Positions 8,354 to 50,366 are shown, counted from the stretch's first letter. The stretch is DNA of 64,000 nt from Isurus oxyrinchus (GCA_026770705.1 JANJGN010000150.1:434001-498000), one strand, 5' to 3'. Notes: a model not told the origin generated them from the sequence alone. A program made the numbers and translations.

Positions 8354-8393
8354 ATGATCGGGAAATCTTACTTCCTCCTGTCACTTCTCCAAG
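8354..8393 (+). CDS. Gene A signal-peptide exon (MIGKSYFLLSLLQ)
   Basis: ACAATG start, hydrophobic core, phase-1 donor CAAG|GTAATA, acceptor TTCTCTTTCAG ending 8311. Identical peptide at 24975 and 63796. Confidence 0.85.
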
Positions 8394-11300
8394 GTAATAT
8401 CATCGTCAGCTCGGACAGATTTATGGTGAATAGTCTTTGTAAAAGATCATTCTTATTGAGCTTTGATTGGTAACAGATTCAGCAGTGAGCCAGTGTACAA
8501 ACTCACACCAAGTCCCATTGACCCATCACCCCTGTGCTCACTGATATACACTGACTCCCTGTCTGACAGCAGAATTGGAGGAGAGCAGAGATCTCAGAGG
8601 GGTGAAGGGGCTGGATGAGGTTACAGAGGTAGGGACTGGAGAGGGGGTTGGGGGGATTGGGAATTGAGGATGAGAATCTTAAAATGGAGGCACTGCTTGA
8701 CTGGGAGCCTATGTAAGTCAGTGTGGATGGGGGGAAGGGTGGTAAAAGGTTGAGTAGAAAATCAGGGATAAAAACTGGAGGATGAAGTCTCTCCCTATGT
8801 TAGGTGTCTGATAGCAATATCCTAAAATGTGTCTTTTGCTGATTTTATTCAGAATTTCCCATGAAGACAACACAGCAGCTCCTAGAATAGACAGGCTGTT
8901 CAGTGTCACACTTCCTGTCCATTCTCACCTTGCTAGATACTTCAATAAGGGAGCAAGATAACTGAAAGAGAGAAGGAAGGTAAAGCTGTCCGTGTGTAAA
9001 GGTGTCAATATTCAGTTTGTATATTTGTCTTTCTCTCGACACATGCAGAGCTCAGGCGAGAGGCGCTTTGTTAGTGTGTTTCACAGTGTCTGCTGGAGTA
9101 GGGTCAGTGCTGAGCTTGGGGACAAGTCAGTCTACAATGCTGCATCGGAATCAACAATACAACAATATGGGGTTTGGATCAGAAATAATCCCTTAGACAA
9201 TGAGGATCCATAGAGATTCCTTAGACAATGAGGATCCAAAGAGATTCCTGAAACAATGAGGATCCAAAGAGATTCCTCAGACAATGAAGGTCTAAAGTGC
9301 ACCAATCATATTGAACCAGATTAACCAATCAGCTGTGTTGAAGAGCAGACAGGAATGTTAGGCTAATTAGTGATTCATGACGGTGATAATGGGGGGAGTT
9401 CTGACGGCTCCTAATCCATTGTCCTGTCTTGTAAATCAGCACTGAATGGATCTCAGTTGGTGTGTCTTGTAGACACAGTGTTGGGTCACATTTAATCATT
9501 GACATTAAAGTGATAATTAGCGGCTGCATTTGCACTGAACATGAAGCAGTCACCAGGCCGCTTGAAATGAAGAATCCAAATGGTCCAGATGAGCAGAGAG
9601 CAATAGATTATATTTACATAGCGCCTTAACTGTAACAAAAAACAATCCAAGGGGCTACACAGGAGCATTATAATACAAGGCACAGTGACACTGTCTCACT
9701 GGCTTCACTAAACAGGGTCCTGAGGACCATGAGCCAATGTAGAATGAACTTGTCCACTCCTGTGTCCAGGATTCTCTTCCATCCATTGTGAAACCTTGAG
9801 GAGTTCCTTGTGTGTCCTGTATATGGTCCACACTGCAGCCACTGTGCCCCAGTGATGGAGGGGGTGGATATCGAGTCTAGTGGATCTACAAACCTTCCAG
9901 AGTTAAATATTGATATTTCTCTCCCCAGTTGGACTGTCACAAGAGTGGAAAGGTGACAGTCCCCGAGAGGTGACAGCGCAGGAAGGTTCGTGTGTACAGA
10001 TTCCATGTCATTACAGTTACCCATCACATTTGGAAAGCCAACCGCGAGGTGGACTCTGGTTTAATAATGAGGAACAGATTCCCTGGGCTCCCATTGCCTT
10101 TCACTCCAAGGATCACAGTCACGAGTTACCATGGTTCCGCCATCGGACCCGGCTGTCTGGAGACCTGAAAGATGGCGACTGTTCCCTGATTATAAACAAC
10201 ATCAGACGGGAAGATGCAGGAACTTATTATTTCAGAATAGAATTTGACAATGGTCCGAGCCATAACTATTACCCTGTAACCCAGCTTCACGTTTCTGGTA
10301 AGTGCTGTGTTATAATTACTCAACAATTCACATTCAACACTCAATGGGAAATAACACAAACTGTGACGTTTACGTATTAACACAAAACACAGCTTATTAT
10401 AACACACTGTCTGATTCTCAATAACCTGGTGATAGCTTCCAGTTCAGTCCTAAAGCAACCTCTAATACTCACTTTAATATCAATGATGAAAAGCATTAAC
10501 TGTATTATCAGGTTATCCACTCCCATCAATCTCTCCTGTCCTGTTTAAAAGTCTGACTTATCGATAAAAGAAAGATGTGCATTTCTGCAGCGCAATTTAC
10601 CACCTCAGGAGGATCCAAATCCCTTCACAGCCAATGAAATTATTCCTGAATTGTGGTCACAGATGTTAAACACAGCAGGCAGTTTGTGCACAGCAAGATC
10701 CAGCAAACCACAATGTAATAAATCACCCAGATCGCTGAGGAAATGAGAAGCCAGTGAACTCAAACCTCTGGTCTGATGAAGAGTCATACGGACTCGAACG
10801 TTAACCCTGTCTTCCTCTCCACTGATACTGTCAGACCTGCTGAGTCTTTCCAGCAATTTTTGTTTTGGTTTCAGATTTCCAGCATCCACAGTATTCTGCT
10901 TTTAACTCCAATCTCTGGTCTGAGCCTCTTCTCTCATCCAGTGTTCTCAATTCACATGTCTCGGAGTGAACGTGTATTAAGCTGAGAGACAGAAACACTA
11001 CTGCCAAAGAGCAAGAAAATCTTTCCTGATCATTGTAACCTCTCAGTTCTGATATCATCCTTGTAAAAGTGCTTTCTCTTGTGGGACTGTGATTTCTATT
11101 TGAACTGATGCTTCACGTTATATTTCTCTAAAAGGATCCATTCTCTGTCTGTTAGATTTCACAGATAAACCCACAATATTCCCTGCGGAAATTATTGCAG
11201 GAAAGCGTGTGGATGTAAGCTGCACCTTCAACACAACGTGCAATGGAACAGCAGCACCTGTCTTAACCTGGGACACTCCCACTGACGTACCTGGATCAGT

Positions 11301-14300
11301 CTCAAACACTGTAACTCAGCATGGTGTCACTCTGACCTATACTTCTGTTCTGACCCTGATCCCATCACTCAAACACCACGGACACACTTTCAGCTGCAGA
11401 GTGAGATATCCAACTGTTTCATCGGAGCGGACCCTCGTACTAACTGTGCAATGTAAGTACGGACACCTTTTATTCTACATTAGCTAGAACAGTGTAGATA
11501 ATGCACAGCAGGATCCCATAGAAAGGTATTCTGATGAGAATCAGAGAATCTGTTTTTTAGGGAAAATTGTGACCGGAACACAATTAATAACAGTTTCTGA
11601 ACAGTAACACAGCGGCTTTTATTTCCAGCCAAGAGACCGATAGAGCAGAGCAGGAATCGCAATGTACTCACCCCCTGACAGTGCAGCACTCCCTCAGTAC
11701 TGACCCTCTGACAGTGCAGCACTCCCTCAGTACTGACCCTCTGACAGTGCAGCACTCCCTCAGTACTGAACCTCTGACAGTGCAGCACTCACTCAGTACT
11801 GACCCCCTGACAGTGCAGCACTCACTCAGTACTGACCCTCTGACAGTGCAGTACACCCTCAGTACTGACCCTCTGACAGTGCAGCACTCCCTCAGTACTC
11901 ACCCCCTGACAGTGCAGCACTCCCTCAGTACTGACCCTCCGACAGTGCAGCACTCCCTCAGTACTGACCCTCTGACAGTGCAGCACTCCCTCAGTACTGA
12001 CCCTCTGACAGTGCAGCACTCCCTCAGTACTGACCCTCTGACAGTGCAGCACTCACTCAATACTGAACCTCTGACAGTACAGCACTCCCTCAGTACTGAC
12101 CCCCTGACAGTGCAGCACTCCCTCAGTACTGACCCTCTGACAGTGCAGTACTCACTCAATACTGAACCTCTGACAGTGCAGCACTCCCTCAGTACTCACC
12201 CCCTGACAGTGCAGCACTCCCTCAGTACTGACCCTCTGACAGTGCAGCACTCCCTCAGTACTGACCCTCTGACAGTGCAGCACTCCCTCAGTACTGACCC
12301 CCTGACAGTGCAGCACTCCCTCAGTACTGACCCTCTGACAGTGCAGCACTCCCTCAGTACTGACCCTCTGACAGTGCAGCACTCCCTCAGTACTGACCCC
12401 CTGACCGTGCAGCACTCACTCAGTACTGACCTTCTGACTGTACAGCATTCCCTCAGTACTGACCCTCTGACTGTACAGCATTCCCTTAGTACTGACCCTC
12501 CGACAGTGCAGCTCTCCCTCAGTACTGGCCCTCTGACTGTGCAGCACTCCCTCAATACTGACCCTCTGACAGGGCAGCACTCCCTCAGTACTGACCCTTT
12601 GACAGTGCAGCACTCCCTCAGTACTGACCCTCTGACAGTGCAGCACCCCCTCAGTTCTGATCCTCCGACAGTGCAGCACCTCCTCAGTACTGACTCTCCG
12701 ACAGTGCAGCACTCCTTCAGTACTGACCCTCTGACAGTGCAGCACTCCCTTAGTACTGACCCTCCAACAGTGCAGCACTCAATCAGTACAGACCCTGCAA
12801 CAGTGTTGCAATCCCTCAGTACTGACCCCCTGATCGTGCAGCACTCCCTCAGTACTGATCCTCCGACATCGCAGCACTCCCTCAATAATGTCCCTCCAAC
12901 AGTGCAGCACTCCCTCAGTACTGACCCTCCGACAGTGCAGCACTCCTTCAGTACTGACCCTCTGACAGTGCAGCACTCCCTCAGTCCTGTCCCTCTGATA
13001 GTGCAACACTCTCTCAGAACTGACCCGCTGACAGTGCAGCACTCCCTCAGTACTGACCCTCTGACAGTGCAGCACTCCCTCAGTACTGACCCTCTGACAG
13101 TGCAGCACTCTCTCAGTACTGATCCTCCAACAGTTTAGAAATCTCTCTGTACTGATCCTCCATCCGTGCAGCACTCCCACAGTACAGACCCTCCAACAGT
13201 GCAGCACTCCCTCAGTACTGACCCTCTGACAGTGCAGCACTCCCTCAGTACTGACCCTCTGACAGTGCAGCACTCCTTCACTACTGAAGCTCCAACTCTG
13301 CAGCGCTCCCTCAGATCTTACAATCCAACATTGAATACCTCCCTCCCGACTGACCCTCAGATAATGCTGCAGTCCCTTGTTCCAGAGCTTCCAACTGTGC
13401 AACACTCCCTCAGTAATGACCCTTTGACAGTGCTGCTCTCCCTCAGTATTGCCTTTAAACTAAATAGATGGGGAGAGTGTTCTGGAGAGGGTATATGTAG
13501 GCTTACAAAGCAAAAGGATTTGTCAGCATTGCAGGATAGCTGTTTTGGTGATGATACCCAGTGTGTGACAGGTGGGTACACAGTGTCCAAACATTAAAAT
13601 ACATCAGCAAATAGTGTCAGAGGGAGGAAAATGATAAAAAGACAAAATTAATGGCTCTTGACTTAAATGCACATAGTATTTGGAACAACATAAATGAATT
13701 AAAGGCACAAATAGAGGTTAATGGGTTTGATCTTATAGCCATTATGGAGACATGGTTACAAGGAGATCAAAGCTTTGAAATAAATATTCAGGGGTATGTG
13801 ACTTTTCAAAAAGACAGGCAGGAAGGAAAGGTGGTGGGGTAGCTTTGTTAATAGGAGATGGAATAAGTACGAAAGCAAGAAATGATCTTGGATCGGAGGG
13901 TATAGAATCCATATGGCTCGAGGTAATGAATAACAAGTGGAGGAAGGAACTGGTGGGAGTGGTCTATCAACCCCATGACTGTAGCTCGGCTATAGGACAG
14001 AGAATAAATCATGAGATAATGAGGGCATGTAAAAAAGGCAGTACATTAATCTTCATGTAGATTGGGAAAACCCAATTGGCAGAGGTAGCCATGAGCAAGA
14101 ATTCATAGAGTGTATTCAAGACAGTTTCCTGGAATAATATGTCGTGGATCTAACCAGGGATCAGGCTATTTTGGATCTGGTAATGTGTAATGAGGCAGGT
14201 TTCATACATGATCTCAGAATAAATGATCCCCTGGAAAACAGTGACCATAACATGGTAGAATTTAGCATTCCGTTTGAGACTGAGAAACGTGGGTCGGAAA

Positions 14301-17300
14301 CAACTGTGCTGGACTTAAATAAGTGTAATGACAAAGGAATAAGGACAGGGTTGTCTGGAGTGGACTGGGAAAGGGGTTTAGCAGAAAAGATGCTGGATGA
14401 ACAATGGCAGATCTTTAACAAAATAGCTCATGACTCACAACAAAGATATATCCCAGTGAGGAAGAAGGATTGTAGGAAGAGAATAAACCAACCTGGGTTA
14501 CCCAAAGAAGTTAAGGTGTGTGTCAAATTGAAAGAAAAAACATGCAGCACGACAAAGATTAGTGGTAAGCCAGAGGATTGAGAGAGTTTTAAAAACCAAC
14601 AGAAGATGACCAAAAAATAAATAAAGAGGGAGAAAACTAGGTAAACTAGTAATTGATATAAAAAAGGACAGTAAAAGCTTCTTTAAATATATAAAAAGGG
14701 AGAGAGAGACCAAAGTGAACATGGGCCCCTTAGAGAACTAGGCTGGGGAAATAATAATGGGGAACCAGAAAATGACAGAGGAGTTGAATAAATACTTTGC
14801 ATCAGTCTTCACAATAGAACACACTAATATCATTCCAAAAATACTAAATAATCAAGGGGCAAAAGGGGGGTGGGGAGAGGAAATAAATACAATAACTATC
14901 ACTAGAGAATAACGCTAGCGAAACTAATGGGTCTCAAGTCTGATAGGTCTCCTGGACCTGATAGGTTGCATCTTAGGATATTAAAGGAAGTAGATGCAGA
15001 GATAGTGGATGTACTGGTTTTAATCTTCCAAGAATCCTTAGATTCTGGGAAACTCCCAGAGGATTGGAAATCTGCCAAAGTAACACCCATATTCAAAAAG
15101 GGAGGGAGACAACAAACAGGTAACTATAGGCCAGTTAGCTTAACATCTGTCATTGGGAACATGTTAGAGTCCATTATAAAGGATGTAATAGCAGACTATT
15201 TAGAAATGCATAATTTAAACAAACACAGGCTTCATGAAGGGGAAATCATGCATGACAAATTTATTAGAATTCTTTGAGGAGGTAACAAACAGGATAGATA
15301 AAGGGGAACCAGTAGATGTAATATATTTGGATTTCCAAAAGGCATTCAGTAAAGTACCACATATAAGGCTACTTAATAAGATAAGAGCCCATGGTGTTGG
15401 GGGCAGTATATTAGCATGGATAGAGGATCGGCTAACTAATAGAAGTCAGAGAGTTGGGATAAGGGGGGCATTTTCAGGATGACAACCTGTGGATTGCCAC
15501 ACGGATCAGTGCTGGGGCCACAATTATTTACAATATATAATTAATGACTTGGATGAGGGAAATTAATGTACTATCGCCAAGTTTGCGGATGACACAAAAA
15601 TAGATGGGAAGGCAAGCGGTGAGGGTGACACGAAGAGTCTACAGAGAGACATAGACAGGTTCAGTGAGTGGGCATCAACTTGGCAGATGGAATATAATGT
15701 GGGAAAATGTGAGCTGCTGCACTGTGGCAGGATGTATAGAGGAGCTGAATATTATTTCAATGGAGAAAGACATTGGAAAGCTGAAGCATAGAGGAATTTG
15801 GGGGTCATCAGAAAGATAACATACAAGTTCAGCAGTTAATAGGGAAGGCAGGTGGAATGTTGGCCTTTATTTCAAAGGGAATGGAGTATAAAAATAGGGA
15901 AGACTTGCTAAAACTTTACAAGGCACTCGTTAGACCACACCTAGAATACTGTGAGCAGTTTTGGTTCCCTTATCTAAGGAAAGATGTACTGGCATCGGAG
16001 GCAGTCCAGAGAAGGTTCACTAGGTTGATCCCAGTAATGGAGGGATTTTCATATGAGGAGAGGTTGAGTAGGATGGGCCTGTACTCATTGGAGTTTAGGA
16101 GAATGAGAGCTGACCTTATTGAAACATATAAGATTCTTAGGGTGCTTGACAGGGTAGATGCTGAGAGGTTGTTTCCCCTTGTGGGAGAGTCTAGGACCAG
16201 AGGGCATAATCTCAGAGTAAGGGGTCACCCATTTAAGACAGAGATGAGGAGTTTCTTCTCTCAGAGGGTAGTGAATGTGTGGAATTCTATACCGCAGAGA
16301 GCTGCAGAGGCTGGGTCATTAATTATATTCAAGGCTGAGATACACAGTTTTTTGGGGGACAAGTCAGTCTACAATGCTGCATCGGAATCAACAATACAAC
16401 AATATGGGGGTTGGATCAGAAATAATCCCTTAGACAATGAGGATCCAAAAAGATTCCTTAGACAAAGAAGATCCAAAGAGATTCATTAAACAATGAGGAT
16501 CCAGGGATAAATATTGAGATTTCTCTCCCCAGCTGGACTGTCACAAGAGTGGAAAGGTGACACTCCACGAGAGGTGACAGCGCAGGAATCTGTGTACAGA
16601 TTCCATTTCGTTACAGTTATCCAGTAGAGTTGGAAAACAAACCACGAGATGGAATCTGGTGTAATAAAGAAACACACAAATTGGGTTCTCCCATTGCCTT
16701 TCACTCCAAGGATCACAGTCACGAGTTACCACGGTTCCACCATCGGACCCGGCTGTCTGGAGACCTGAAAGATGGCGACTGTTCCCTGATTATAAACAAC
16801 ATCAGACGGGAAGATGCAGGACCTTATTTTTTCAGGATAGAATTTGACGGCAGGAAAAGATACAACTACTATCCTGTAACCCAGCTTCATGTTTCTGGTA
16901 AGTGCTGTGTTATAATTACTCAACAATTCACATTCAACACTCAATGGGAAATAACACAAACTGTGACGTTTACATATTAACACAAAACACAGTTTATTTT
17001 TACACACTGTCTGATTCTCAATAACCTGGTGATTGCTTCCAGTTCAGTCTTAAAGCAACCTCTAATAATCACTTTAATGTCAATGATTAAATGTATTGAC
17101 TGTGTCCATCAATGCTATCAGGCTATCCACTCCCATCAGTCTCTCTAATCCTGTTTAAAAGTCTAACAATTTGACAAAAGAAGGACGTGCATTCCTATAG
17201 CACCTTTCACCACCTCAACAAACTTCAAATCACTTCACAGACAATGAAGAAATTCTTGAAGTATAGTCACTGTCTAACGTGGCAGTGAGTTTGTACACAG

Positions 17301-20243: not shown

Positions 20244-20369
20244 AGCTTTGTACAGCAACAATCTGGTCAGTCAGTGCGGACAAATAACGTGTGATGTTGG
20301 GTTAAGTTGTAATGAAACTGGTCAGTGTCCTGGTTAGAATCACCTTCGTATCAGAGAGGTATTCCAGCA

Positions 20370-20940: not shown

Positions 20941-21679
20941 TACTCAATCCCTCGATTTATGAAAAGCTTATTCTTTCCATCAGCACAAACAGCAATTTCC
21001 AAGCGGACTCCCATCAGCAGACAGAGTGCAATGAAACATCGGCATGCCTGCTTCTTAATGTACGGAGAGAAACCTGCAACGAGAGATTCTCCTTCTTCTC
21101 CTCAGCAAGCTGAAACTTTTCCTTATACCTGGTGCTCCCCAGTCCTGCTGTGTGGACACATCATAACCACGGCATTATCTGGCTGTGTGCAGCCAACATG
21201 GTCGAATAGGAATGAACGGAAATGTGACGTTGCTAAACTCTGTTCTCTGATTGGAATGTGCTTTCTGAATGCTGCACCTTTTTCATGCTGCGATAGATTG
21301 TAAGAAGCATTTGGGTTATGAATAAAATTACATTGATTAACACAAGTGATTAAAATGCTCAGCCTGTTCTGTAGATATTTATAGATTAAAATTCTTATTT
21401 TGAAGCCAAATTTTTGGCTCAAAGACATTACTTCATGTTGTCACATTTGTTCTATCATACGAATTCCTGTGCCCAGCTTTATAATAGAAATTTCCCATGT
21501 AAACATGTCACATTGTAGTTTCACACTCCTGCCAGTGGTGGTGCCATTCCAAAGCTGTCTTGCTGCACCGAACAGTGGGAAATATTCTCGACGTGTACAT
21601 GATGTTGTTGTTACACGGACATCAGGCGGAACCTTGGGCAGTGCCTAGAATGCACTTAGAACAGTGCAGACCACGCTCA

Positions 21680-24974: not shown

Positions 24975-25014
24975 ATGATCGGGAAATCCTACTTCCTCCT
25001 GTCACTTCTCCAAG
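24975..25014 (+). CDS. Gene B signal-peptide exon
   Basis: MIGKSYFLLSLLQ, then G|GTAATA. Confidence 0.85.
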
Positions 25015-39705: not shown

Positions 39706-39769
<64 letters not shown>

Positions 39770-42700: not shown

Positions 42701-45700
42701 GATTACCTGCTGATTGTTCTCTGTCTTTGTTCCAGATCCCCCACAGGAGACGATGGTGTCCATCAGCAGATCCTCAGGTGGGATAAGAGAGGGAAGCAAT
42801 ATCACATTAACCTGCTCCAGTGAAAGTGTCCCACCGATATCTCATTACACCTGGTTCAGGATCGAGGGGAACACCAGCACCCAGTTAAATACAAGTAGCC
42901 GCACTCTCTCCTTCACTCCTGTAACACGGGAGAATGATGCAGGTTTCTACTGCACAGCGAGGAACCCAATGGGTAACAGCATCTCCAACATCACCCACCT
43001 GAACGTACAATGTAAGCATTTTACTCCCCCTGTCTCTGCTTAAAACTCAAACACTTTCTGTCTGAGGGCAGCTTCCTTGCTGTGGTTTAGCATAACTAGC
43101 ATCACCTCCCTGCTTTTTTCACCCTGCGCCTCTCCGAGATACATAAGGAGATATCAGAACAGGGACTGAAAGTTCAGAGAAAGAGGCCAGATTTTAAGGA
43201 GTGTCTGAAATGAGGAGAGAGATAGACATGGAGAGGTTTACGGTGGGAATTCTAGAGCTCGGGGCCCAGGCAGCTGAAGGCACGGCCGCCAATGGTGGAG
43301 CGATAGGAATCGGGGGATGGTCAAGAGGCCGGAATTGGAGGAACACAGAGATCTCGGAGGGTTGTAGAGGCTGGAGGAGGTTACAGAGATAGGGAGGGTT
43401 GTGATGGCTGGAGGAGGTTACAGAGATAGGGAGGGTTGTAGGGGCTGGAGGAGGTAACAGAGATAGGGAGGGTTGTAGATGCTGGAGGAGGTAACAGAGA
43501 TAGGGAGGTGTGTAGGGGCTGGAGGAGGTTACAGAGATAGGGAGGGTTGTGGGGTCTGGAGGAGGTTACAGAGATAGGGAGGGTTGAAGGGGCTGGAGGA
43601 GGTTACAGAGATAGGGAGGGTTGTAGATGCTGGAGGAGGTAACAGAGATAGGGAGGGAGTAAGGAGGAATTTGAAACGATGTAAATTTTAAAATTGTGGC
43701 ATTGTCGGACCGGGAGCCAGTGTAGCTCAGTGACCAACAGGGAGTGATGTGTGAACGGGACTCGGTGTGAGTTAGGACATGGGGACAGCAGAGTTTGGGA
43801 TGAGCTGATGTTTCCGGAGAGTGGAAGATGGGAGGTCGGGCAGGAGAGTGTTGGGATAGTCGAGTGCGGAGGTAACAAAGGCGGGAATGAGTGTTTCAGT
43901 GTTAAGATTCTATCTTACGCTCTAACTTTGCTATGAAGTTGTCTCATTGTTGTCCTTCCCTCCTCAGATAAGCCGGAGATTTCCCAGCAGTCGGAGTGCA
44001 CTCGGAGGTCAGAGGGGGTCACCTGCGTCTGTGTGGCCAACTCCAACCCACCCGGAGACCTCACCTGGCACCTGCCCAGTGCCAAAATCAGTGGTAACCA
44101 AACACACGGAGGTTTTGTGTCGTGGCAGGTCAGAGATGGGCATCTGGTGACTGGTTCCCTCACCCTGATGAGACCCCAGGATGAGGGGGGAGTGATGGCA
44201 TCCTGCTCGGTTCAAAACCCACACGGGGAAGCCATGTTCAAGATGTATCTGTGGGTCAAAGGTGAGAGACTCGCTCAGGATCGATCTCCACTCAGCTGGA
44301 TTGATCCCTAAACTCGAGAATTCCCTCCCTCAACCTCTCCACCTCTCTCTCTACCTCCTCTAAGATGCTCTTTACAATTGACCCCTTTGACCAAGCTTTG
44401 AATCGCCTGACCTCATGTGACAATGGCAACTCTTGGTCAAATTGGAGCCAGGCCGTTCAGTGGGTGATGTCAGGAAGCACTTCTTCACACAAAGGGGAGT
44501 GGAAATCTGGAACCCTCTCCCCCAGATAAGCTGCTTCATTGGGTGCAAGACAGAAAGCTTTGACAAAATGTCCTTTCTCAGCAATACTCAGGTTCTCCTC
44601 CCAAACGATAAAATATTTTATATAAACATTTCATAGATTACATTGATAAATATTATATATAAATGTTACATAGATTACATTGATAAATATTATATATAAA
44701 TGTTACATAGATTACATTGATAAATATTATATATAAATGTTACATAGATTACGTTGAGAAACGCAACAGCTGATTTGTGCAGAGCAAGATCCCACAAACA
44801 ACAGTGTGAAGATGAGGTGATAAATGATTATTTTAGTCATGTTAGTTGATACATATATATAGAAATTAAAGATATAATTACACATTTAGTGAGGGAAACC
44901 TGTCCATTTTAACAGGTCTGGGTGTATATGTGACTCCAGTCTCAAACACCAACATGGTTAACTCTTACCTGCCCTCTGAACTGGTCTCCCAGTTTGGGAC
45001 AAACCAGTGGTTCAGGAGGAAGACCCCCCACCACCTTCTCAAGGGAAACTAGGGATGGACAATAAATGTCAGCATTGCCCGAGAATGAGTATTTAAACAC
45101 TGAGTGAGTGTATCGCTTCTCGAGATACATCGGAGCATCATTGTAAACCTGTAGTGCAGTAATTAATGGCTGTTTTTACAGGTAGAGACTCCAGTAAATG
45201 GACAGTAGGATTGTTCACGGCTGGGATCATGTTGAGTGTTTTCCTGGCTGGAATCTTCATCTTCATCTGTGTGAGAAAGTAAGTCTGAAGATTTAACTTG
45301 ATTTTAATATAAACATTTGTTTAGGATTAATTGGACAGTTTTTACAAAGGGCCAGCACAGGCACGATGGGCTGAGTGGCTTCCTCCTGAGCTGTGAGATT
45401 TTAAATTCTTTCATCGAATGTGACTGTCACTGGCGTGGCCAATACTAATTGCCCATTCCCTAATTGCCCCTTGAGAATGAGGTAGTGAGATGCCTTCTTG
45501 ACCCGCTGCAGTCCATGTGGTGTAGGTACACCCACAGTGCTGTTAGAGAGGGAGTTCCAGGAGTTTGACCCAGCGACAGTGAAGGAACGGTGATATATTT
45601 CCAAGTCAGGATGGTGAGTGACTTGGAGGGGAACTTCCAGGTGGTGGTGTTCCCATGTGTCTGCTGCCCTTGTCCTTCTAGATGGTAGAGGTCGTGGGTT

Positions 45701-48700
45701 TGGAAGGTGCTGTTGAAGGAGCCTTGCTGAGTTGCCGCAGTGCATCTTGTAGATGGTACACACACTGCTGCCACTGTGTGTTCATGGTGGAGGGAGTAAA
45801 TGTTTAATGTGGTGGATGGGGTGTCGATCAATCGGGCTGCTTTGTCCTGGATGGTGTCAAGCTTCTTGATTCTGTGCTTTGTGCAGAAGTGATTGAAAGT
45901 GACAGTCCAGTCGTTGGTGTAAGGTTACAGTGGGCTCTGTGTCTGTGCTGCACTGACTCTCTGCTATATGATAACCACAGTGTGATATTGTGTTATTTCA
46001 GGAGAAAGACAGCGATGGAGGAGAGAGTTTCGGGGACCAGTGACATTGCATTGACCCCCAGTCCACTCTCTGTGAAGCACCAGGTACAGGAGCTGTTTAC
46101 ACTCACTCCAAAGCTTCAATCTCAGTGTGTAGACAACACATGTCCCAGATTGCCAGCCCTGTTACCCACTGATTTGTACCTGTGGAGTCAGCAATGGTTC
46201 AGTATCATGCTGTCTCTCTGTTATGACACAGCAACTGGTAAAGGCTGTTGTTTAAAATCCCAGAGGGAAACTTTAAACAACTGTCATAAACTATATTTCC
46301 CAGTGGAATGTTTGAGATGCATCTCTAAATTCAGGAATAAGACCACCAGTTCTCGAGATGGGTTTATATCAAACTAAATGAGACATATATTAATTTACAC
46401 AAGTTAAACATATGCACATGGCTACAAACTAGTATTATCATAACTTTTTAACAAATTCTCAAACTAATCTCCTCTAAGACAACCCATAGTCTTTAAGCAG
46501 ATTCCAGGCATTTTCACCTCTCAAATTCCAGTCTCTCTCTCTATCTCAACCTCCCTTTCTTTCTCTCTCTTTCTCTCTCTCTCATCCTCTCTCTGATTAC
46601 AAGGTGCACGTTAATGAGCTTCACACCAGAAACTTGAGTGAAGAATCCAAGCCGTCACTCACCAGAGCCATTACCGAGGGAGTGCGAGACTGACAGCGGG
46701 TCAGTACTGAGGGAGTGCGAGACTGACAGAGGGTCACTATTGAGGAAGTGCTGCACTGTTGGAGGGTCAGTCCTGAGGGAGCACTGCACTGCCATAGGTG
46801 GTTTCTTTCATAAGACATGGGAGAGAGAGTTAAACCCACTGAGACACGACTGACATTAACGAAGCTGCACAATAATTTAACCCTATCAGTGCCAGTAAAT
46901 AATGTGAGGATGTCTTCTGTTTCCATTTCTCTGTAGGGTAAACAGAACGTGCTGATTACTGAGCCCCGGAACACAACCAGAGACACAACTAGCGAGGGGG
47001 AGACCCCAGCTCCCCGGGGTCCCTCTGAAGGTGCAGTGGGAGGCGATGCTGGACTTGGGAACCCCGGCAAACCTGAAGAGTTTCTCTACGCCAATCCCCA
47101 AGTTTTGAGGGTGTCCAGTGGTGATGGGTCTGTCCACAGGGAAGAGGAGACGGAATACGCACAGATCAGGTTTGAGCATAACTGAATGAGAAATGGGGAG
47201 TGGGAGTGAGGAAATGTGGGTGTGCGGGTAGGGATTGAGATTCCTGGGAACAGGAAACAACCCACTGGGGGAGAGGGGGAGAGAGGGAGGAAGGGATGGA
47301 ATTGGGCTACGGTTGGTGTGGTTTGGAATGAAATGCTTCTCCAGAGAGGACTGGATGCTGAGCCATTGGGGAGTGAGATTCACTGTCTCTCTCTCTTTCT
47401 CTCTCTCTCTTCCTCTCTGTCTCTCTCTTTCTTTCTGTGTCTGTCTCTCATTCTCTATCTCCAGCTCCTCCTTTAAGATGCCCGTTAATAACTGACTTTG
47501 TTGACTCAGCAGTTGGTCTCCTGTCCCTAATATCTCCTCATGTGCCTCAGAGTCAGGTGAAATGTGACTAACAATCCCCGGATGAGCCTTGGGACATTTT
47601 GCTACATTGAAGGTGCTATATAAATGCAAGTTGTTGCAGTAACTCTGATCTGCTTCGATTAACAATGGAACCACAGAGGTTCCTTCGACAGGGCGTGTGT
47701 GCAGCAGGGTCACAATAAATACATTGAGCTGTGAGGTTTTTAATTCTTACATCGAATGTGGCTGTCACTGGTGATGTCCGCATTGATGCCAATCTCTAAC
47801 TGCCCTTGAGAAGGTGGTGGTGAGCTGCCTTCTTCACCCGCTGCAGTCCATGTGGTGTAGGTACACCCACAGTGCTGTTAGAGAGGGAATTCCAGGATGT
47901 TAACCCAGCGACAGTGAAGGAACGGTGATATATTTCCAAGTCAGGATGGTGAGTGACTTGGAGGGGAACTTCCAGGTGGTGGTGTTCCCATGTGTCTGCT
48001 GTCCTTGTCCTTCTGGATGGTAGAGGTCGCGTATTTGGAAGGTGCTGTTGAAGGAGCCTTGCTGAGTTGCTGCAGTGCATCTTGTAGATGGTACACACAC
48101 TGCTGCCACTGTGTGTTCATGGTGGAGGGAGTGAATGTTTAATGTGGTGGATGTGGTATGGATCAATCGGGCTGCTTTGTCCTGGATGGTGTCGAGCGTC
48201 TTGATTCTGTGCTTTGTGCAGAAGTGATTTAAAGAGAGAGTCCAGTCATTGGTGTAAGGTTACAGTGGGCTCTGTGTCTGTGCTGCACTGACTCTCTGCT
48301 ATATGATAACCACAGTGTGATATTTTGTTATTGCAGGAGAAAGACAGCGATGGAGGAGAGAGTTTCAGGGACCAGTGACATTGCATTGACCCCCAGTCCA
48401 CTCTCTGTGAAGCACCAGGTACAGGAGCTGTTTACACTCACTCCAAAGCTTCAATCTCAGTGTGTAGACAACATATGTCCCAGATTCCCAGCCCAGTTAC
48501 CCACTGATTTGTACCTGTGGGGTCAGCAATGGTTCAGTATCATGCTGTCTCTCTGTTATGACACAGCAACTGGTAAAGGCTGTTGCTTAAAATCCCAGAG
48601 GGAAACTTTAAACAGCTGTCGTAACCTATATTTCCCAGTGGAATGTTTGAGATGCAGCTCTAAATTCAGGAATAAGACCACCAGTTCTCAAGATGATTTT

Positions 48701-50366
48701 ATATCAATCTAAATGAGACATTTATTAATTTTCACAAGTTAAACATATGCACATGGCTACAAACTAGTATTATCATAACTTTATAACAAATTCTCAAACT
48801 AATCTCCTCCAAGACAACCCATAGACTTTAAGCAGACACTAGGCAAAGCATTTTCACCTCACAAATTCCAAATGAGGTTCCTTTCACTTTGGTTCCTTTG
48901 CAGACAGGTGAAGTATTACAGCTGCTTTGATGTTACAAGCCTCTGCTCTGCACACACAAAACTGCTCAAGTTATACCCAGCTCTTGAGTGTGAAGAAGAT
49001 GGAGATTGATGGGCTCTTGATTGGTCAGGGGATCAATGGTTAGGAGAGAAGGTGGGAGAATGGGGTTTGTGAAACATATCACCCATGTATGAATGGTGGA
49101 GCAGACTCGATGGACCGAATGGTCTAATTTCTCATCCTATGTCTTATGGTCTTATGGCTTCTGTTTGAAGGTAAATTCGCAATGTATCATCAGGACCTTT
49201 GAACTCCATCTCTTCCAATAATAAATCCCCTTTCATCGTATCAATTTTATTAGTAATATAAACGTTGATTGGTTTAAGATTTCACTCTCAGACTTTGAAT
49301 GTTTTATTTAAAAATGCAAATTACCACTTTACCTCTTTGTTTGCATCTCAAAACTACTATACATCAAAGCACACAGACTGGCTGTCTTTAATCCAATTTA
49401 AATACACACAGACACACACACAGACTAAACCTCTGTTTAAAAAGACAGTTTGCATTTATAATACAAACATTAATAGATTAATAACACTCTGTCTCTGTCC
49501 CTTCATCTCTATCTCTCTCTCTCATCCTCTCTCTCTGATTACAAGGTTCATGTTATTGAGCCTCACACCAGGCACCTGAGTGCAGAATCCAAGCCGTCAC
49601 TCACCAGAGCCATTACCGAGGGAGTGCGGGACTGACAGCGGGTCAGTACTGAAGGAGTGCTGCACTGTCGGAGGGTCAGTACTGAGGGAGTGCTGCACTG
49701 TCAGAGGGTCAGTACTGAGGGAGTGCTGCACTGTTGGAGGGTCAGTACTGAGGGAGTGCTGCACTGACAGAGGGTCAGTACTAAGGGAGCGCTGTATTGT
49801 CGGAGGGTCAGCACTGAGGGAGTGCTGCACTGTTGGAGGGTCAGTACTGAGGGAGTGCTGCACTGACAGAGGGTCAGTACTGAGGGAGTGCTGCACTGTC
49901 GATGGGTCAGTACTGAGGGAGCGCTGTATTGTCGGAGGGTCAGCACTGAGGGAGTGCTGCACTGTTGGAGGGTCAGTACTGAGGGAGTGCTGCACTGCCA
50001 TAGGTGGTGCCTTTTATCCGATAGGAGACAGAGAATTAAACAAGTCTGCACAATAATTTAACCCTATCAGTGCCAGTAATTGATGTGAGGATGTCTTCTG
50101 TTTCCATTTCTCTGTAGGGTAAACAGAACGTGCTGATTACTGAGCCCCGGGACACAACCAGAGACACAACTAGTGAGGGGGAGACCCCAGCTCCCCGGGA
50201 TCTCTCTGAAGGTCCAGTAGGAGGCGATGTTGGACATGGGAATCCTGACAAACCCGACGAGATTCTCTACGCCAACATCAACTTTTCAAAGCTGCCCAGC
50301 GGTGACAGGACTGTGCACAGGAGCGAGGACACGGAATACGCACAGATCAGGTTCCAGAAAAACTGA
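24975..50366 (+). CDS. Gene B: putative inhibitory Siglec-like receptor with 7 Ig domains (V-V-C2x5), TM, ITIM+ITSM; 881 aa with either cytoplasmic cassette
   Basis: join(24975..25014,29433..29810,33154..33522,34335..34631,39400..39681,40585..40866,42736..43011,43968..44261,45182..45278, then 46002..46083+46937..47185 or 48337..48418+50118..50366). Phases are all compatible and the total is 2646 nt with no internal stop. Confidence 0.82.
26500..28400 (-). mobile_element. Degenerate Gypsy-type LTR retrotransposon 5' part (LTR, PBS-like site, gag)
   Basis: gag-like MSTKFPSLNWDVADRLSEFRMFKQRTELWF (27363-27578), a Cys/His knuckle-like remnant near 26900-27000, and minus-strand ...CAACA-TGGTGATCAGCGG near 28190. 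Confidence 0.6.
29433..29810 (+). CDS. Gene B V-set exon V3 (essential Arg replaced by Thr)
   Basis: 378 nt open. DAGPYFFTIKF with ACG at 29747-29749. Longer, basic C-C' loop KMRSYIRNKWSKWST. Confidence 0.9.
30030..31000 (+). mobile_element. L2-like LINE reverse transcriptase fragment
   Basis: RPISSLSFPSKVLER...ETAPIKV...LVLLDLSAAFDTLDH...DPQLYL...LQLNIGKTE. Confidence 0.88.
31055..32192. repeat. 37-bp minisatellite at the L2 3' end (CCCTCCCTATCTC(AGGA/TGTA)xCCTCCTCCAGTCCCTACAA)
   Basis: Period of 37 counted (31091 to 31128); homogeneous to ~31400, then degenerate. Confidence 0.9.
32270..33040 (-). mobile_element. CR1-like LINE 3' fragment
   Basis: FPLVGESRTR...FKTEMRRNF; QRDLGVLVHESQK; GMLAFIAKG. 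Confidence 0.88.
33154..33522 (+). CDS. Gene B V-set exon V4 (essential Arg present, extra Cys)
   Basis: 369 nt open; DAGPYFFRIE; extra TGT at 33252-33254 (YPSCLEN). Confidence 0.93.
34335..34631 (+). CDS. Gene B C2-set exon (CD33-type)
   Basis: 297 nt, AG/GTAAGT; paralog of 11156-11452. Confidence 0.92.
35010..37060 (-). mobile_element. CR1-like LINE, degenerate ORF2 3' portion
   Basis: ORFs 35403-35684 (KANGMLAFIARG) and 36567-37016 (KSFYKYVKR...AEELNIYFGSVFT). Confidence 0.88.
37180..38200 (+). mobile_element. Gypsy-type integrase fragment
   Basis: LTMMDMTTRFPETIPL...FFTHYGL...IQSDQGS (DDE core); downstream AYHP, RFSGP and HINMLK remnants. Confidence 0.82.
38262..38725. other. N-run (masked or unresolved), following a (CA)n tract
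   Basis: Ns seen directly; similar runs at 56842-57028, 57246-57464 and 61045-61313. Confidence 0.95.
38880..39129. mobile_element. Short Penelope-derived insertion forming a 100-bp-arm inverted repeat, with a 13-bp TSD
   Basis: 38880-38979 is the reverse complement of 38982-39081 with one mismatch. AATATAATTCATT occurs at 38867-38879 and 39130-39142. Confidence 0.85.
39400..39681 (+). CDS. Gene B Ig (C2/I-type) exon
   Basis: APQNLSI...IEGNSAEIICSVESFPASNLTW...DTGDYQCVAENEHG; 282 nt, AG/GTGAGT. Confidence 0.92.
40585..40866 (+). CDS. Gene B Ig exon, tandem duplicate of 39400-39681
   Basis: 282 nt, AG/GTGAGT; only about 5 amino acid differences. Confidence 0.9.
40900..41190 (-). mobile_element. 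RTE-clade LINE 3' fragment
   Basis: MLRISWMDRKTNEWL...RERK..YG...IEG is typical of the RTE RT C-terminus. Confidence 0.65.
41190..42405 (-). mobile_element. Penelope-like element 3' portion with GIY-YIG endonuclease
   Basis: ORF 41711-42040 NLIYCIHCSQCGLLYIGDTKHRLGDRSDEH...VACHFN...RKLEEQHLIF...LNIE; upstream RVPPVFTFHP; terminal hammerhead-like remnant at 41225-41260. Confidence 0.88.
42736..43011 (+). CDS. Gene B C2-set exon (CD22-like)
   Basis: PPQETMVSI...IREGSNITLTCSSESVPPISHYTWF...DAGFYCTARNPMG; 276 nt, AG/GTAAGC. Confidence 0.92.
43130..43900 (-). mobile_element. L2-like 3' fragments with an internal 37-bp minisatellite (~43360-43660)
   Basis: Reverse complement of the 31055-32192 unit; ELHWLPVRQ...FKI motif. 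Confidence 0.75.
43968..44261 (+). CDS. Gene B membrane-proximal Ig exon (MAG domain-5-like)
   Basis: KPEISQQSECTRRSEGVTCVCVANSNPP...VTGSLTL...CSVQNPHG has the S-x-C...C-x-C...SNP pattern of the last Ig domain of MAG and CD33-related Siglecs; 294 nt. Confidence 0.9.
44632..44757. repeat. 37-bp AT-rich tandem repeat (~3.4 copies)
   Basis: CATAGATTACATTGATAAATATTATATATAAATGTTA. Confidence 0.9.
45182..45278 (+). CDS. Gene B transmembrane exon (RDSSKWTVGLFTAGIMLSVFLAGIFIFICVRK), uncharged
   Basis: TTTTTACAG acceptor, phase 1; AA|GTAAGT donor, phase 2. Confidence 0.9.
45400..45870 (-). mobile_element. LINE 3' fragment (same family as 50561-52660), duplicated at 47735-48205
   Basis: Reverse complement of the 52230-52620 region. 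Confidence 0.8.
46002..46083 (+). CDS. Gene B cytoplasmic exon 1a (RKTAMEERVSGTSDIALTPSPLSVKHQ)
   Basis: Phase 2 in, phase 0 out; AG/GT. Confidence 0.82.
46937..47185 (+). CDS. Gene B terminal exon 2a: degenerate ITIM (FLYANP) plus ITSM (TEYAQI)
   Basis: CTGTAG acceptor, 249 nt to TGA; AATAAA at 47714-47719. Confidence 0.82.
   Translation, partial: GKQNVLITEPRNTTRDTTSEGETPAPRGPSEGAVGGDAGLGNPGKPEEFLYANPQVLRVSSGDGSVHREEETEYAQIRFEHN
48337..48418 (+). CDS. Gene B cytoplasmic exon 1b (duplicate of 1a)
   Basis: Identical peptide, AG/GT intact. Confidence 0.8.
48554..49487 (-). mobile_element. Solo-LTR-like element (TGTTATGAC...AATAACA); truncated copy at ~46220-46530
   Basis: TG...CA ends; reverse-oriented relative of 50658-51619 and 57492-58667. 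Confidence 0.6.
49615..49998. repeat. 33-bp satellite array in reverse orientation
   Basis: TCAGTACTGAGGGAGTGCTGCACTG units; a shorter paralogous array lies at ~46675-46790. Confidence 0.92.
50118..50366 (+). CDS. Gene B terminal exon 2b: canonical ITIM (ILYANI) plus ITSM (TEYAQI)
   Basis: DEILYANINF...DTEYAQIRF matches the ELHYASLNF...TEYSEVR pattern of CD33-related Siglecs. Confidence 0.9.
   Translation, partial: GKQNVLITEPRDTTRDTTSEGETPAPRDLSEGPVGGDVGHGNPDKPDEILYANINFSKLPSGDRTVHRSEDTEYAQIRFQKN

What the first reader, a model, noticed from the sequence alone, without database searches (positions are those of the whole stretch)
8354..50366. Candidate paired activating/inhibitory Siglec receptor system in a probable cartilaginous fish
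Seen: two adjacent genes share an identical signal peptide, Arg-bearing V domains differing at 16 of 123 residues by manual count (V1 vs V4) and near-identical C2 exons, but have opposite signalling ends. Gene A has an Arg-containing TM and an 11-aa tail without Tyr; gene B has an uncharged TM and ITIM+ITSM. Known: this is the design of mammalian Siglec-14/5 and Siglec-16/11, where the activating partner counters pathogens that exploit the inhibitory one. Inference: an independently evolved or ancient paired sialic-acid-sensing system; I am not aware of one described in sharks but cannot check the literature.
Basis: partly seen in the sequence, partly recalled or inferred. Interest (0 to 1): 0.92.

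Follow-up and report, generated by a model that had tools for sequence, protein, structure and literature searches.

The report
Shark activating/inhibitory Siglec-like gene pair
Two neighbouring shark genes encode immune sensors of the sialic-acid-binding Siglec type with very similar sensing ends, one wired to switch cells on and one to switch them off. This design is described in mammals, and I found no paper describing it in sharks.

Summary
Gene A (8354 to about 21345) and gene B (24975-50366) start with the same signal peptide. Their Siglec-type V domains carry the key arginine and differ at 16 of 123 residues. Their C2 exons are 91-96% alike.

Gene A ends in a membrane exon with a buried Arg and a 12-residue tail without Tyr. 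Gene B ends in an uncharged membrane exon followed by ITIM and ITSM motifs.

Siglec membership is well supported:
- The sequence search of solved structures ranks 17 Siglec chains first.
- The first 46 fold matches are Siglec V domains.
- A family profile scores CD33, Siglec-5, Siglec-10, MAG and Siglec-8 far above CD22 and Siglec-15.

Contigs from public sequencing runs (labelled RNA by guess) join a C2 exon to the Arg membrane exon. At about 99% identity they could come from a close paralogue.

- Gene A carries a frameshifted V exon, a second C2 exon and a half Ig exon.
- V1 is a recombinant of an outer-type and an inner-type V.
- Gene B has a tandem V-V head whose outer V has lost the arginine, and two alternative tail cassettes.

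NCBI's automatic annotation already names this family Siglec-like in more than 20 sharks and rays, but I found no paper on it. The scan noted the same family earlier on other pieces of this genome. Ligand binding, the adaptor chain and real functional pairing remain untested.

The parts
8354..8393 (+). Gene A leader exon (signal peptide MIGKSYFLLSLLQ, ends in phase 1)
   Evidence: ATG, GT donor and translation. The 1.25 kb around it is 90% identical to gene B's promoter and leader region.
9929..10297 (+). V1, gene A's intact V-set exon with the essential Arg (YYFRIE). It is a hybrid of an outer-type 5' part and an inner-type 3' part.
   Evidence: Pfam V-set and Ig_CD22. Top PDB sequence matches are Siglecs. 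AlphaFold2 pLDDT 89 and a Siglec-only top of the fold search. Mosaic flanks.
11156..11452 (+). C2-1, the first C2-set exon of gene A (donor CAAT|GT)
   Evidence: AG/GT sites and phase 1. Pfam C2-set_2.
16533..16897 (+). V2psi, a dead V exon with a 4-nt deletion and the B-strand Cys changed to Phe. Entered in phase 1 it reaches a stop after 30 codons.
   Evidence: Alignment of the four V exons and translation. Contigs from two runs carry the missing 4 nt at this site (table 4).
18213..18509 (+). C2-2, the second C2-set exon of gene A (donor CAAG|GT). This is the type seen joined to the Arg membrane exon.
   Evidence: Joints 16896->18212 and 18507->20102 in runs X1, X4 and X7. PDB matches to domain 2 of MAG and CD33.
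18831..18983 (+). Remnant of an Ig3 exon. Only the 3' 51 codons and the donor remain. It is 98% identical to gene B's Ig3b.
   Evidence: Self-BLAST and translation. One contig, about 94% alike and so from a paralogue, joins this donor to the membrane exon.
20104..20265 (+). TM-A exon: a short stalk, a membrane span with a central Arg, a 12-residue tail and a stop at 20241-20243, followed by a donor
   Evidence: Splice joints into and out of it. The same cassette occurs in shark protein models P0166, P0154, P0155, P0156, P0165 and P0019.
20984..21345 (+). Non-coding last exon of gene A (AATAAA at 21321). Its 3' 170 nt are 79% identical to the 3'UTR that follows gene B's tail-b stop codon.
   Evidence: Joint 20264/5->20983/4 in X4 and X7. 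BLAST and poly(A) signals.
24975..25014 (+). Gene B leader exon, encoding the same peptide as gene A
29433..29810 (+). V3, the outer V exon of gene B. It is intact but the essential Arg is replaced (YFFTIK).
   Evidence: It groups with the outer V domains of basking and white shark proteins.
33154..33522 (+). V4, the inner V exon of gene B, with the essential Arg (YFFRIE) and an extra Cys in the B-C loop
34335..34631 (+). C2-B, gene B's C2-set exon
38262..38725 (.). Assembly gap inside the intron between C2-B and Ig3a (not filled)
39400..39681 (+). Ig3a exon
40585..40866 (+). Ig3b exon, a tandem copy 90.5% identical to the Ig3a unit
42736..43011 (+). Ig4 exon
43968..44261 (+). Ig5 exon, the membrane-proximal Ig domain
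45182..45278 (+). TM-B exon with an uncharged membrane span
46002..47185 (+). First tail cassette: cyt1a (46002-46083) and tail-a (46937-47185). Tail-a has FLYANP, which does not fit the ITIM pattern, plus TEYAQI.
   Evidence: The same tail variant is present in white-shark model P0014.
48337..50366 (+). Second tail cassette: cyt1b (48337-48418) and tail-b (50118-50366), carrying ITIM ILYANI and ITSM TEYAQI
   Evidence: It is 90% identical to the tails of P0002 and P0203.
63797..63836 (+). Leader exon of a third family member at the edge of the window

Best explanation
The window covers part of a tandem cluster of shark Siglec genes of the CD33/MAG-like type.

Gene A is an activating-type member. 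Its open path is a leader, one arginine-bearing V domain, a C2 domain, and a membrane exon with a buried Arg and almost no tail. Such a receptor should signal by pairing in the membrane with a separate ITAM-bearing adaptor chain that carries an acidic residue.

Gene B is an inhibitory-type member. It has the same leader, a V-V head in which only the inner V keeps the arginine, five or more further Ig domains, an uncharged membrane span, and a tail whose ITIM and ITSM should recruit SHP-type phosphatases once phosphorylated.

Because the ligand-binding V and C2 exons of the two genes stay similar through recombination, the same or similar sialylated ligands could give opposite signals. This is the arrangement of mammalian Siglec-5/14 and Siglec-11/16.

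Shown here: the exon structure, Siglec membership of the V and C2 domains, the opposite signalling ends, splicing of a C2 exon to the Arg membrane exon in contigs of runs labelled RNA by guess, and mosaic sequence exchange between A and B.

Inferred: sialic-acid binding, the identity of the adaptor, phosphatase recruitment, co-expression, and any role against pathogens.
For: - Siglec hallmarks in V1 and V4: the F-strand Arg in YFFRIE, a B-E strand cysteine pair with no F-strand Cys, and the extra V and C2 cysteines at the positions of the Siglec inter-domain bond.
- The PDB sequence search ranks 17 Siglec chains first (Siglec-5 at E 1.5e-15). The next family, pIgR, is at 5e-8.
- The AlphaFold2 model has pLDDT 89, and the first 46 Foldseek matches are all Siglec V domains with TM-scores of 0.80-0.87.
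- A family profile scores CD33 129 bits, Siglec-5 119, Siglec-10 119, MAG 115, Siglec-8 115, CD22 71 and Siglec-15 46.
- Contigs give joints V donor->C2-2, C2-2->TM-A and TM-A->last exon in runs of two organisms. One 559-nt contig has 5 mismatches in 459 laid bases.
- Gene models with the same builds exist: V-C2-TMA, V-V-C2-TMA and V-C2-Ig3-Ig3-Ig4-Ig5-TMB-tail.
- The Arg cassette is conserved in lamniform, catshark and carpet-shark proteins.
- V1 and V4 are 97.8% identical over 10051-10450, against about 90% for other segments shared by A and B. Gene A's Ig3 remnant is 98% identical to gene B's Ig3b.
Against: - Gene A holds a frameshifted V exon, a half Ig exon, a retroelement insertion and satellite DNA, so it may be decaying.
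- The contigs are about 99% rather than 100% identical, and the family has many near-copies, so transcription of this exact copy is not shown.
- Only the 16400-21400 stretch could be laid, so the leader->V1 and V1->C2 joints of gene A were not examined.
- V1 and V4 differ at 16 residues, several in loops, so their ligands may differ.
- The Arg-to-adaptor step rests on analogy. A 2014 survey found no FcR gamma chain in sharks (PMC4016189).
- A scaffold gap sits inside gene B.
Confidence: 0.7

Rival explanations
1. These are neighbours in a modular multigene repertoire, not a dedicated pair. V, C2, Ig and signalling exons are shuffled freely across dozens of genes, so A and B are adjacent by chance of duplication. 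Each has its own ligand preference, and the activating-inhibitory balance works at the level of the family, as with KIR, LILR or teleost NITR genes.
For: - On the V-domain tree the activating label needs 9 changes for 9 rows, no better than shuffled labels.
- V4's nearest relatives are V domains of white-shark activating models (94-96% identity), closer than gene A's V1 at 88%.
- At least four tail types occur in the family: the Arg cassette, ITIM+ITSM, a YENC...IYANV tail, and an ITAM tail in P0012.
- A third gene starts at the window's end.
- The scan noted many such clusters elsewhere in this genome.
Against: The 400-bp tract at 97.8% identity between V1 and V4, and the 98% identity between the Ig3 remnant and Ig3b, show that these two neighbours, or very close copies, have exchanged sequence recently. 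This reading overlaps with the best explanation and differs mainly in emphasis.
Confidence: 0.45
2. Gene A at this locus is a non-functional relic. The contigs come from intact paralogues elsewhere, and the open leader-V1-C2-TM path is only what remains of a composite, decaying gene.
For: - V2psi has a frameshift and has lost a cysteine. The Ig3 exon is half deleted. A reverse-transcriptase-bearing element (13845-16489) and 1.8 kb of satellite sit between C2-1 and V2psi.
- The contigs show about 1% mismatch, and one is about 6% diverged.
- No database protein matches V1 exactly.
Against: - Every exon needed for a 281-residue receptor is intact, with AG/GT sites and matching phases.
- The promoter and leader region is conserved.
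- The TM-A exon differs from white-shark models at only 3-5 of 45 residues and keeps the Arg.
- The C2-2 donor form (CAAG) is the one seen joined to TM-A.
- Dead exons can simply be skipped.
Confidence: 0.2
3. The receptors recognise something other than sialic acid, such as protein ligands, or they act in adhesion as MAG does. The Siglec fold would then be only ancestry.
For: - V3 has lost the arginine yet stays open.
- V1 versus V4 has dN/dS of 0.88, with changes clustered in loops.
- MAG scores nearly as high as the CD33-related Siglecs.
Against: - Arg is kept in V1, V4 and more than 90% of 37 aligned family members (column R102).
- The immune-type ITIM/ITSM and Arg-membrane ends are unlike MAG.
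Confidence: 0.12

Closest known systems
Mammalian paired Siglecs: Siglec-5/Siglec-14 and Siglec-11/Siglec-16
   Same: - Adjacent genes with similar V-C2 ligand-binding ends.
- One partner has ITIM plus a membrane-distal ITIM-like or ITSM motif. The other has a basic residue in the membrane span and a short tail.
- There are signs of sequence exchange between the partners.
- Family members have lost the essential Arg.

The pair concept is described in PMC4042635 and PMC13358205.
   Different: - The shark V domains are 88% identical overall and reach about 98% only over a 400-bp tract. From memory, the human pair is near-identical across both binding domains.
- Gene B has a tandem V-V head, which I do not know of in any mammalian Siglec (from memory).
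- The activating end is a self-contained exon with its own stop, followed by a non-coding last exon.
- The pair sits in a much larger, freely recombining family.
- An origin independent of the primate pairs is likely but was not tested.
CD33-related Siglecs as a subgroup (CD33, Siglec-5 to -12)
   Same: - Highest profile scores against solved structures.
- The tail layout of ITIM (I/L-x-Y-A-x-I/L) followed about 25 residues later by T-E-Y-x-x-I (comparison with the mammalian tails from memory).
- A clustered, fast-changing gene family.
   Different: - Orthology and synteny with the mammalian cluster were not tested, and MAG scores almost as high.
- A paper on bony fish states that fish have only Siglec-1, CD22, MAG and Siglec-15 and lack CD33-related Siglecs (PMC7226832). 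That paper does not mention sharks.
Other paired Ig-superfamily receptor families (KIR, LILR, PILR, SIRP, Xenopus CEACAMs, teleost NITRs)
   Same: Multigene clusters with similar ectodomains and opposite signalling ends. The ends are an ITIM tail versus a charged membrane residue, and they arise by exon shuffling (PMC5112662 for Xenopus CEACAMs; the others from memory).
   Different: The binding domain here is a Siglec V-set with the sialic-acid arginine, not a C2-only or CEACAM-type head. A 2014 survey found no KIR/LILR-type genes in sharks (PMC4016189), so this family may fill that role. That last point is speculation.

Membership tests
Siglec family (I-type lectins) | N-terminal V-set Ig domain with the conserved sialic-acid-binding arginine on strand F | tested here: met
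   V1 (YYFRIE) and V4 (YFFRIE) align Arg-to-Arg with Siglec-5 and Siglec-7. V3 has Thr at this position. The Arg column is kept in at least 90% of 37 family members.
Siglec family (I-type lectins) | Unusual intra-sheet disulfide (strand B to strand E) with no strand-F cysteine | tested here: met
   The cysteines in IPC and GDCSL are invariant, and the canonical Y-x-C on strand F reads Y-F-F or Y-Y-F. The bond itself was not shown.
Siglec family (I-type lectins) | Extra cysteines in the V domain and in domain 2 that form the inter-domain disulfide | tested here: inconclusive
   The first V cysteine (GSC) and the second C2 cysteine (NTTC) sit where MAG and CD33 have theirs. No coordinates were available to measure the distance between them.
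Siglec family (I-type lectins) | Fold of the V domain closest to solved Siglec V domains | tested here: met
   The first 46 Foldseek matches are sialoadhesin, CD33, Siglec-7, MAG, Siglec-10, Siglec-8 and Siglec-5. The first non-Siglec is at rank 47.
Siglec family (I-type lectins) | Binding of sialylated glycans | not testable with these tools
   Needs a glycan array or cell binding with an arginine mutant.
CD33-related Siglec subgroup | Cytoplasmic ITIM plus a membrane-distal ITIM-like or ITSM motif | tested here: met
   Tail-b has ILYANI and TEYAQI. Tail-a keeps only TEYAQI.
CD33-related Siglec subgroup | Phylogenetic grouping with, or synteny to, the mammalian CD33-related cluster | tested here: inconclusive
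   Profile scores favour CD33, Siglec-5 and Siglec-10, but MAG is within 15 bits. No tree with named tetrapod references and no synteny test was made.
Paired activating/inhibitory receptors | Closely linked genes with similar ligand-binding domains and opposite signalling ends | tested here: met
   A and B are 3.6 kb apart on one strand. V is 87% and C2 91-94% identical in protein. One ends in an Arg membrane span with a short tail, the other in ITIM/ITSM.
Paired activating/inhibitory receptors | Sequence exchange (gene conversion) that keeps the binding domains alike | tested here: met
   V1 and V4 are 97.8% identical over 400 bp, including 152 of 153 intron bases, against 90-92% elsewhere. 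The Ig3 remnant and Ig3b are 98% identical. A donor copy elsewhere in the genome cannot be excluded.
Paired activating/inhibitory receptors | Association of the charged membrane span with an ITAM adaptor, the same ligand for both partners, and co-expression | not testable with these tools
   There was no access to shark adaptor sequences or to expression by cell type. The TM-A exon has no match among solved structures.

The most novel reading that the evidence does not exclude
Sharks and rays carry an old, greatly expanded CD33/MAG-like Siglec family. It is built from interchangeable exons: single or stacked V heads, variable Ig stalks, and at least four signalling ends. It works as their main paired-receptor system for sensing sialic acids as 'self', evolved independently of the primate Siglec pairs, and fills the place that KIR/LILR-type families hold in bony vertebrates. 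Local exchange between neighbours such as A and B keeps activating decoys matched to inhibitory receptors.
Probability: 0.4. Interest if true: 0.75.

Novelty: new variant of a known kind. Interest (0 to 1): 0.6.

Why it matters
Paired Siglecs are a textbook case of host-pathogen arms races, but they have been studied almost only in mammals. A paper on bony fish states that fish lack CD33-related Siglecs.

A shark family with the same activating versus inhibitory logic would have two consequences:
- It would push this way of sensing sialic acid back to, or show it re-invented in, the oldest living jawed vertebrates.
- It would give a natural experiment in how such pairs are made. Here the process is visible in the DNA: a membrane exon with its own stop placed ahead of an old 3'UTR, a V domain rebuilt by recombination, and fresh exchange between neighbours.

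The family also offers new sialoglycan-binding domains to test, including stacked V-V heads.

Tried and rejected
- No spliced, joined protein of gene A or B was handed to any tool. All searches and the fold were done exon by exon, by reference, as required.
Window exons are 90-98% identical to white-shark and basking-shark models, and none is 100%.
- The TM-A exon has no match among solved structures.
- A search restricted to the TM cassette of P0166 returned only three white-shark Siglec-like models.
- dN/dS for V1 versus V4 is 0.88. The 5 replacement and 0 silent changes in codons 51-122 are not significant (my estimate from the site counts, about 0.29), so positive selection is not claimed.
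- No ITIM-exon remnant was found upstream of gene A's last exon. Only the 3'UTR part is homologous.
- No hidden Ig3 exon was found beside the gap. Whether one lies inside it is unknown, and the gap was left unfilled.
- Six literature searches found no paper on shark or ray Siglec families. The Cao and Crocker review was not held, and subscription journals are mostly missing from the library.
- Only one read-laying run was allowed, so the leader, V1 and C2-1 of gene A and all of gene B have no transcript check.


Full report
**Layout of the window**

Self-comparison and ORF listing show a tandem array of related units on the + strand, separated by a 33-bp satellite and retroelement fragments.

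A 1.25-kb promoter and leader block occurs at 7762-9013 and again at 24384-25630, at 90% identity. A third copy runs off the window's end at 63517-64000 (92-93% to the other two). All three encode the same leader peptide, MIGKSYFLLSLLQ, ending in phase 1.

Four V-type exons, three C2 exons, two and a half Ig3 exons, one Ig4, one Ig5, two different membrane exons and two tail cassettes follow. Every exon I count as functional has an AG acceptor, a GT donor and a matching phase.

- V1 (9929-10297) and V4 (33154-33522) differ at 15 of 122 whole codons plus the split first codon.
- The C2 exons differ at 4-8 of 98 whole codons in protein.
- Gene A's membrane exon (20104-20265) encodes a hydrophobic span with a central Arg, 12 further residues without Tyr, and a stop at 20241-20243.
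- Gene B's membrane exon (45182-45278) is uncharged. Its last exon (50118-50366) has ILYANI and TEYAQI, which are ITIM and ITSM by their usual patterns.
- Summing exon lengths, leader-V1-C2-TM-A gives 281 residues. Gene B gives 881 residues with both V exons, or 755 with V4 alone.

**The assembly gap**

The gap (38262-38423 and 38432-38725) lies in the intron between C2-B (which ends at 34631) and Ig3a (which starts at 39400). A CA-rich tract lies on its left. On its right is a 119-nt stretch that is 89% identical to sequence downstream of Ig3a.

No exon or frame crosses the gap. I did not fill it. Whether it hides another exon, or joins two contigs wrongly, cannot be told from the window. The exon order on both sides (V, C2, Ig3, Ig3, Ig4, Ig5, TM, tail) matches the domain order of a zebra-shark gene model, P0017, which argues for continuity.

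Gene A:
- V2psi (16533-16897) has a 4-nt deletion and a Cys-to-Phe change. Read in phase it stops after 30 codons, so it must be skipped.
- A second C2 exon, C2-2 (18213-18509), follows V2psi.
- An Ig3 remnant lies at 18831-18983. It has lost its 5' half and its acceptor.
- A reverse-transcriptase-bearing element and 1.8 kb of satellite lie between C2-1 and V2psi.

Gene B:
- It has two V exons. V3 (29433-29810) is intact, but the key arginine is replaced by Thr.
- The tail is duplicated as a cassette: 45387-46530 matches 47725-48870 at 94%, and 46669-47204 matches 49875-50385 at 82%. The first copy reads FLYANP, which does not fit the ITIM pattern, but it keeps TEYAQI. The same variant tail ends a white-shark model, P0014.

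**Is it a Siglec?**

- Pfam finds V-set and the CD22-type first Ig domain in V1, V3 and V4, and C2-set_2 in the C2 exons.
- A sequence search of all solved structures with V1 puts 17 Siglec chains first: Siglec-5 at E 1.5e-15, then Siglec-7, Siglec-8, MAG, Siglec-10, CD33 and sialoadhesin. The next family, pIgR, is at 5e-8. Siglec-15 (2e-6) and CD22 (2.5e-5) are far weaker.
- The alignment to Siglec-5 places the arginine of YYFRIE on the essential arginine. It also shows the Siglec-type cysteine pattern, with B and E strand cysteines and none on strand F.
- The C2 exon matches domain 2 of MAG and CD33 and carries the second cysteine used for the inter-domain bond.
- An AlphaFold2 model of V1, built with 36 relatives, has mean pLDDT 89. 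In the Foldseek search of the PDB the first 46 matches are all Siglec V domains, with TM-scores of 0.80-0.87. The first non-Siglec is at rank 47.
- A profile of the shark and ray family scores CD33 129 bits, Siglec-5 119, Siglec-10 119, MAG 115, Siglec-8 115, CD22 71 and Siglec-15 46. The family belongs with the CD33-related/MAG group, not with CD22 or Siglec-15. Orthology to the mammalian cluster was not tested.

**Is the activating build expressed?**

I could lay runs on one stretch only, 16400-21400. All four runs are kept as contigs and are labelled RNA by guess. They show these canonical GT..AG joints:
- V donor to C2-2 acceptor (16896->18212), in X1, X4 and X7.
- C2-2 donor to TM-A acceptor (18507->20102), in X1, X4 and X7.
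- TM-A donor to a last exon (20264/5->20983/4), in X4 and X7.

One 559-nt contig of X4 runs C2, then TM-A, then into the last exon, with 5 mismatches in 459 laid bases. The overlap of two bases at the C2/TM joint fits C2-2's CAAG end and not C2-1's CAAT end.

Caveats:
- About 1% mismatch, in a family full of near-copies, does not tie the contigs to this locus.
- The V part of one contig differs from V2psi at 15 of 157 bases, much as V1 (17) or V4 (14) would. It comes from an intact V exon that I cannot place.
- The leader and V1 of gene A were outside the laid stretch.
- A fourth run joins the Ig3-remnant donor to TM-A at about 94% identity, so it clearly comes from a paralogue.
- A 'goes back' joint, V donor to V acceptor, shows that V-V heads are spliced in one run.

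**How gene A was built**

The stop codon lies 22 nt before the last exon junction, and the last exon (20984 to about 21345, AATAAA at 21321) is non-coding. Its 3' 170 nt are 79% identical to the 3'UTR right after gene B's tail-b stop. No ITIM-exon remnant is left upstream of it. This fits an activating gene derived from an inhibitory-type gene by use of a self-terminating membrane exon ahead of the old terminal exon.

V1 is a recombinant:
- Its 5' intron flank (9705-9880) is 87-98% identical to V3's flank and cannot be aligned to V4's.
- From about 10050 through the 3' intron flank to 10450 it is V4-like, and V3 cannot be aligned.
- Over 10051-10450, V1 and V4 are 391/400 = 97.8% identical, including 152/153 intron bases. 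V1-V2psi is 90.0% and V2psi-V4 is 91.5%. The other segments shared by A and B are about 90-92% identical.

Gene A's Ig3 remnant is 98% identical to gene B's Ig3b, while Ig3a and Ig3b are only 90.5% alike.

This mosaic is what repeated unequal recombination or gene conversion between neighbours would leave. In mammals that process keeps paired Siglecs alike. A donor copy elsewhere in the genome cannot be excluded.

I checked it only on the few sequences seen here.

**The wider family**

A scan of 1.8 billion representative proteins with V1 found 1513 hits and 36 below E 1e-30. Word-index searches added named proteins.

[quoted passage not shown] They occur in more than 20 elasmobranchs, including white, basking, cat, hound, horn, bamboo, epaulette, zebra and whale sharks, sawfish, skates and rays.

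The builds include:
- V-C2-TMA: P0166, P0156 and P0165, 270-273 residues.
- V-V-C2-TMA: P0154 and P0155.
- V-C2-Ig3x4-TMA: P0019.
- V-V-TMB-tail: P0002.
- V-C2-Ig3-Ig3-Ig4-Ig5-TMB-tail: P0017.

The Arg cassette is conserved in lamniform sharks, catsharks and carpet sharks. This conservation argues that it is functional. Other members end in an ITAM (P0012; Pfam ITAM hit at 18.7 bits, below its 22.2 cut-off) or in a YENC...IYANV tail.

On a tree of 44 V domains, V3 groups with outer V domains (support 93). V1 and V4 fall in one lamniform group. The activating and inhibitory labels are fully interspersed: 9 changes for 9 activating rows, which all 500 shuffles match. V4's closest relative is the V of a white-shark activating model, at 94-96% identity. 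Pairing of similar heads with opposite ends is thus a property of the whole family, made again and again by exon shuffling.

The window's exons are 90-98% identical to white-shark and basking-shark models, and none is identical.

**Mechanism, with what is shown and what is inferred**

Shown:
- Two adjacent genes with Siglec V-C2 heads and opposite signalling ends.
- Splicing of the activating build in run contigs.
- Recent sequence exchange between the two genes.

Inferred from established knowledge of Siglec-14, -15 and -16, KIR and related receptors: a basic residue in the membrane span pairs with an acidic residue of an ITAM adaptor. The adaptor in sharks is open. A 2014 survey found no FcR gamma chain and no KIR/LILR-type genes in sharks, on the much poorer data of that time (PMC4016189).

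Inferred from the motif patterns: the phosphorylated ITIM and ITSM recruit SHP-type phosphatases.

Inferred from the arginine and the fold: sialic-acid binding.

The idea that the activating partner counters pathogens that exploit the inhibitory one is carried over from the mammalian literature (PMC4042635, PMC13358205) and is untested here.

**Novelty**

A paper on Siglecs of bony fish says that only Siglec-1, CD22, MAG and Siglec-15 are regularly present in fish and that fish genomes lack CD33-related Siglecs (PMC7226832). It does not mention sharks. The whale-shark genome paper only lists Siglecs among Ig gene families.

Six full-text searches found no description of a shark or ray Siglec family or of its paired design. 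The library lacks most subscription journals, so this absence is weak evidence.

Public gene models already carry Siglec names, and this scan noted the same family earlier on other pieces of this genome. What this window adds is a worked example with the recombination history still visible.

I rate it a new variant of a known kind, of moderate to good interest to people who study Siglecs and comparative immunology.

Noticed in passing
1490-6134, 7139-7536, 11664-13448, 21683-24157, 49614-49997 (inverted), 60079-60370, 62823-63185: A 33-bp satellite, up to 141 copies and 4.6 kb long, sits between and inside the Siglec-like genes in both orientations. One unit lies directly after the C2-2 exon at about 18541-18575. 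It may serve as a substrate for the unequal recombination that shuffles exons here. Run contigs show very high word depth over it.
   Followed up: partly
63517-64000: A third promoter and leader block (92-93% identical to those of genes A and B) encodes the same signal peptide at about 63797-63836. The gene cluster therefore continues beyond the window.
   Followed up: partly
24950-24974: Gene B has an out-of-frame ATG 25 nt upstream of the leader ATG, and gene A does not. A white-shark model (P0014) starts with a peptide that reads like this upstream frame (MKYLGVDNDREI...), which suggests a mis-set start in that model or a small upstream ORF.
   Followed up: no
46937-47185 versus 50118-50366: The upstream tail copy does not fit the ITIM pattern (FLYANP) but keeps the ITSM. 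It has no AATAAA or ATTAAA within 500 nt after its stop and lacks the 3'UTR homology of the downstream copy. Even so, the same tail variant ends a white-shark gene model.
   Followed up: partly
31057-32192 and 43356-43657: A 37-bp satellite lies in the V3-V4 intron, and an inverted shorter array lies in the Ig4-Ig5 intron of gene B.
   Followed up: no
13845-16489, 30031-30730, 32379-32903, 35160-35775, 51640-52107: Fragments of retroelements lie in introns and between genes. Pfam gives weak reverse-transcriptase hits at 15234-15479 and 51640-52104, both below the curated cut-off. The fragment at 13845-16489 ends at the acceptor side of the dead V2psi exon.
   Followed up: partly
16400-21400 (laid contigs): One contig joins a V donor back to a V acceptor (16896->16532). 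This is transcript-level evidence for stacked V-V heads in this family. Two runs carry the 4 nt that V2psi lacks.
   Followed up: partly
P0012 (sawfish), P0170, P0173 and P0175 (other sharks): Family members outside the window end in an ITAM-like YxxL-x7-YxxL tail, or in a YENC...(I/V)Y(A/G)NV tail. The family therefore uses at least four signalling ends.
   Followed up: partly
54203-55028: A very GC-rich stretch (59% GC, strong C skew) made of CACCCC-type simple repeats lies downstream of gene B.
   Followed up: no
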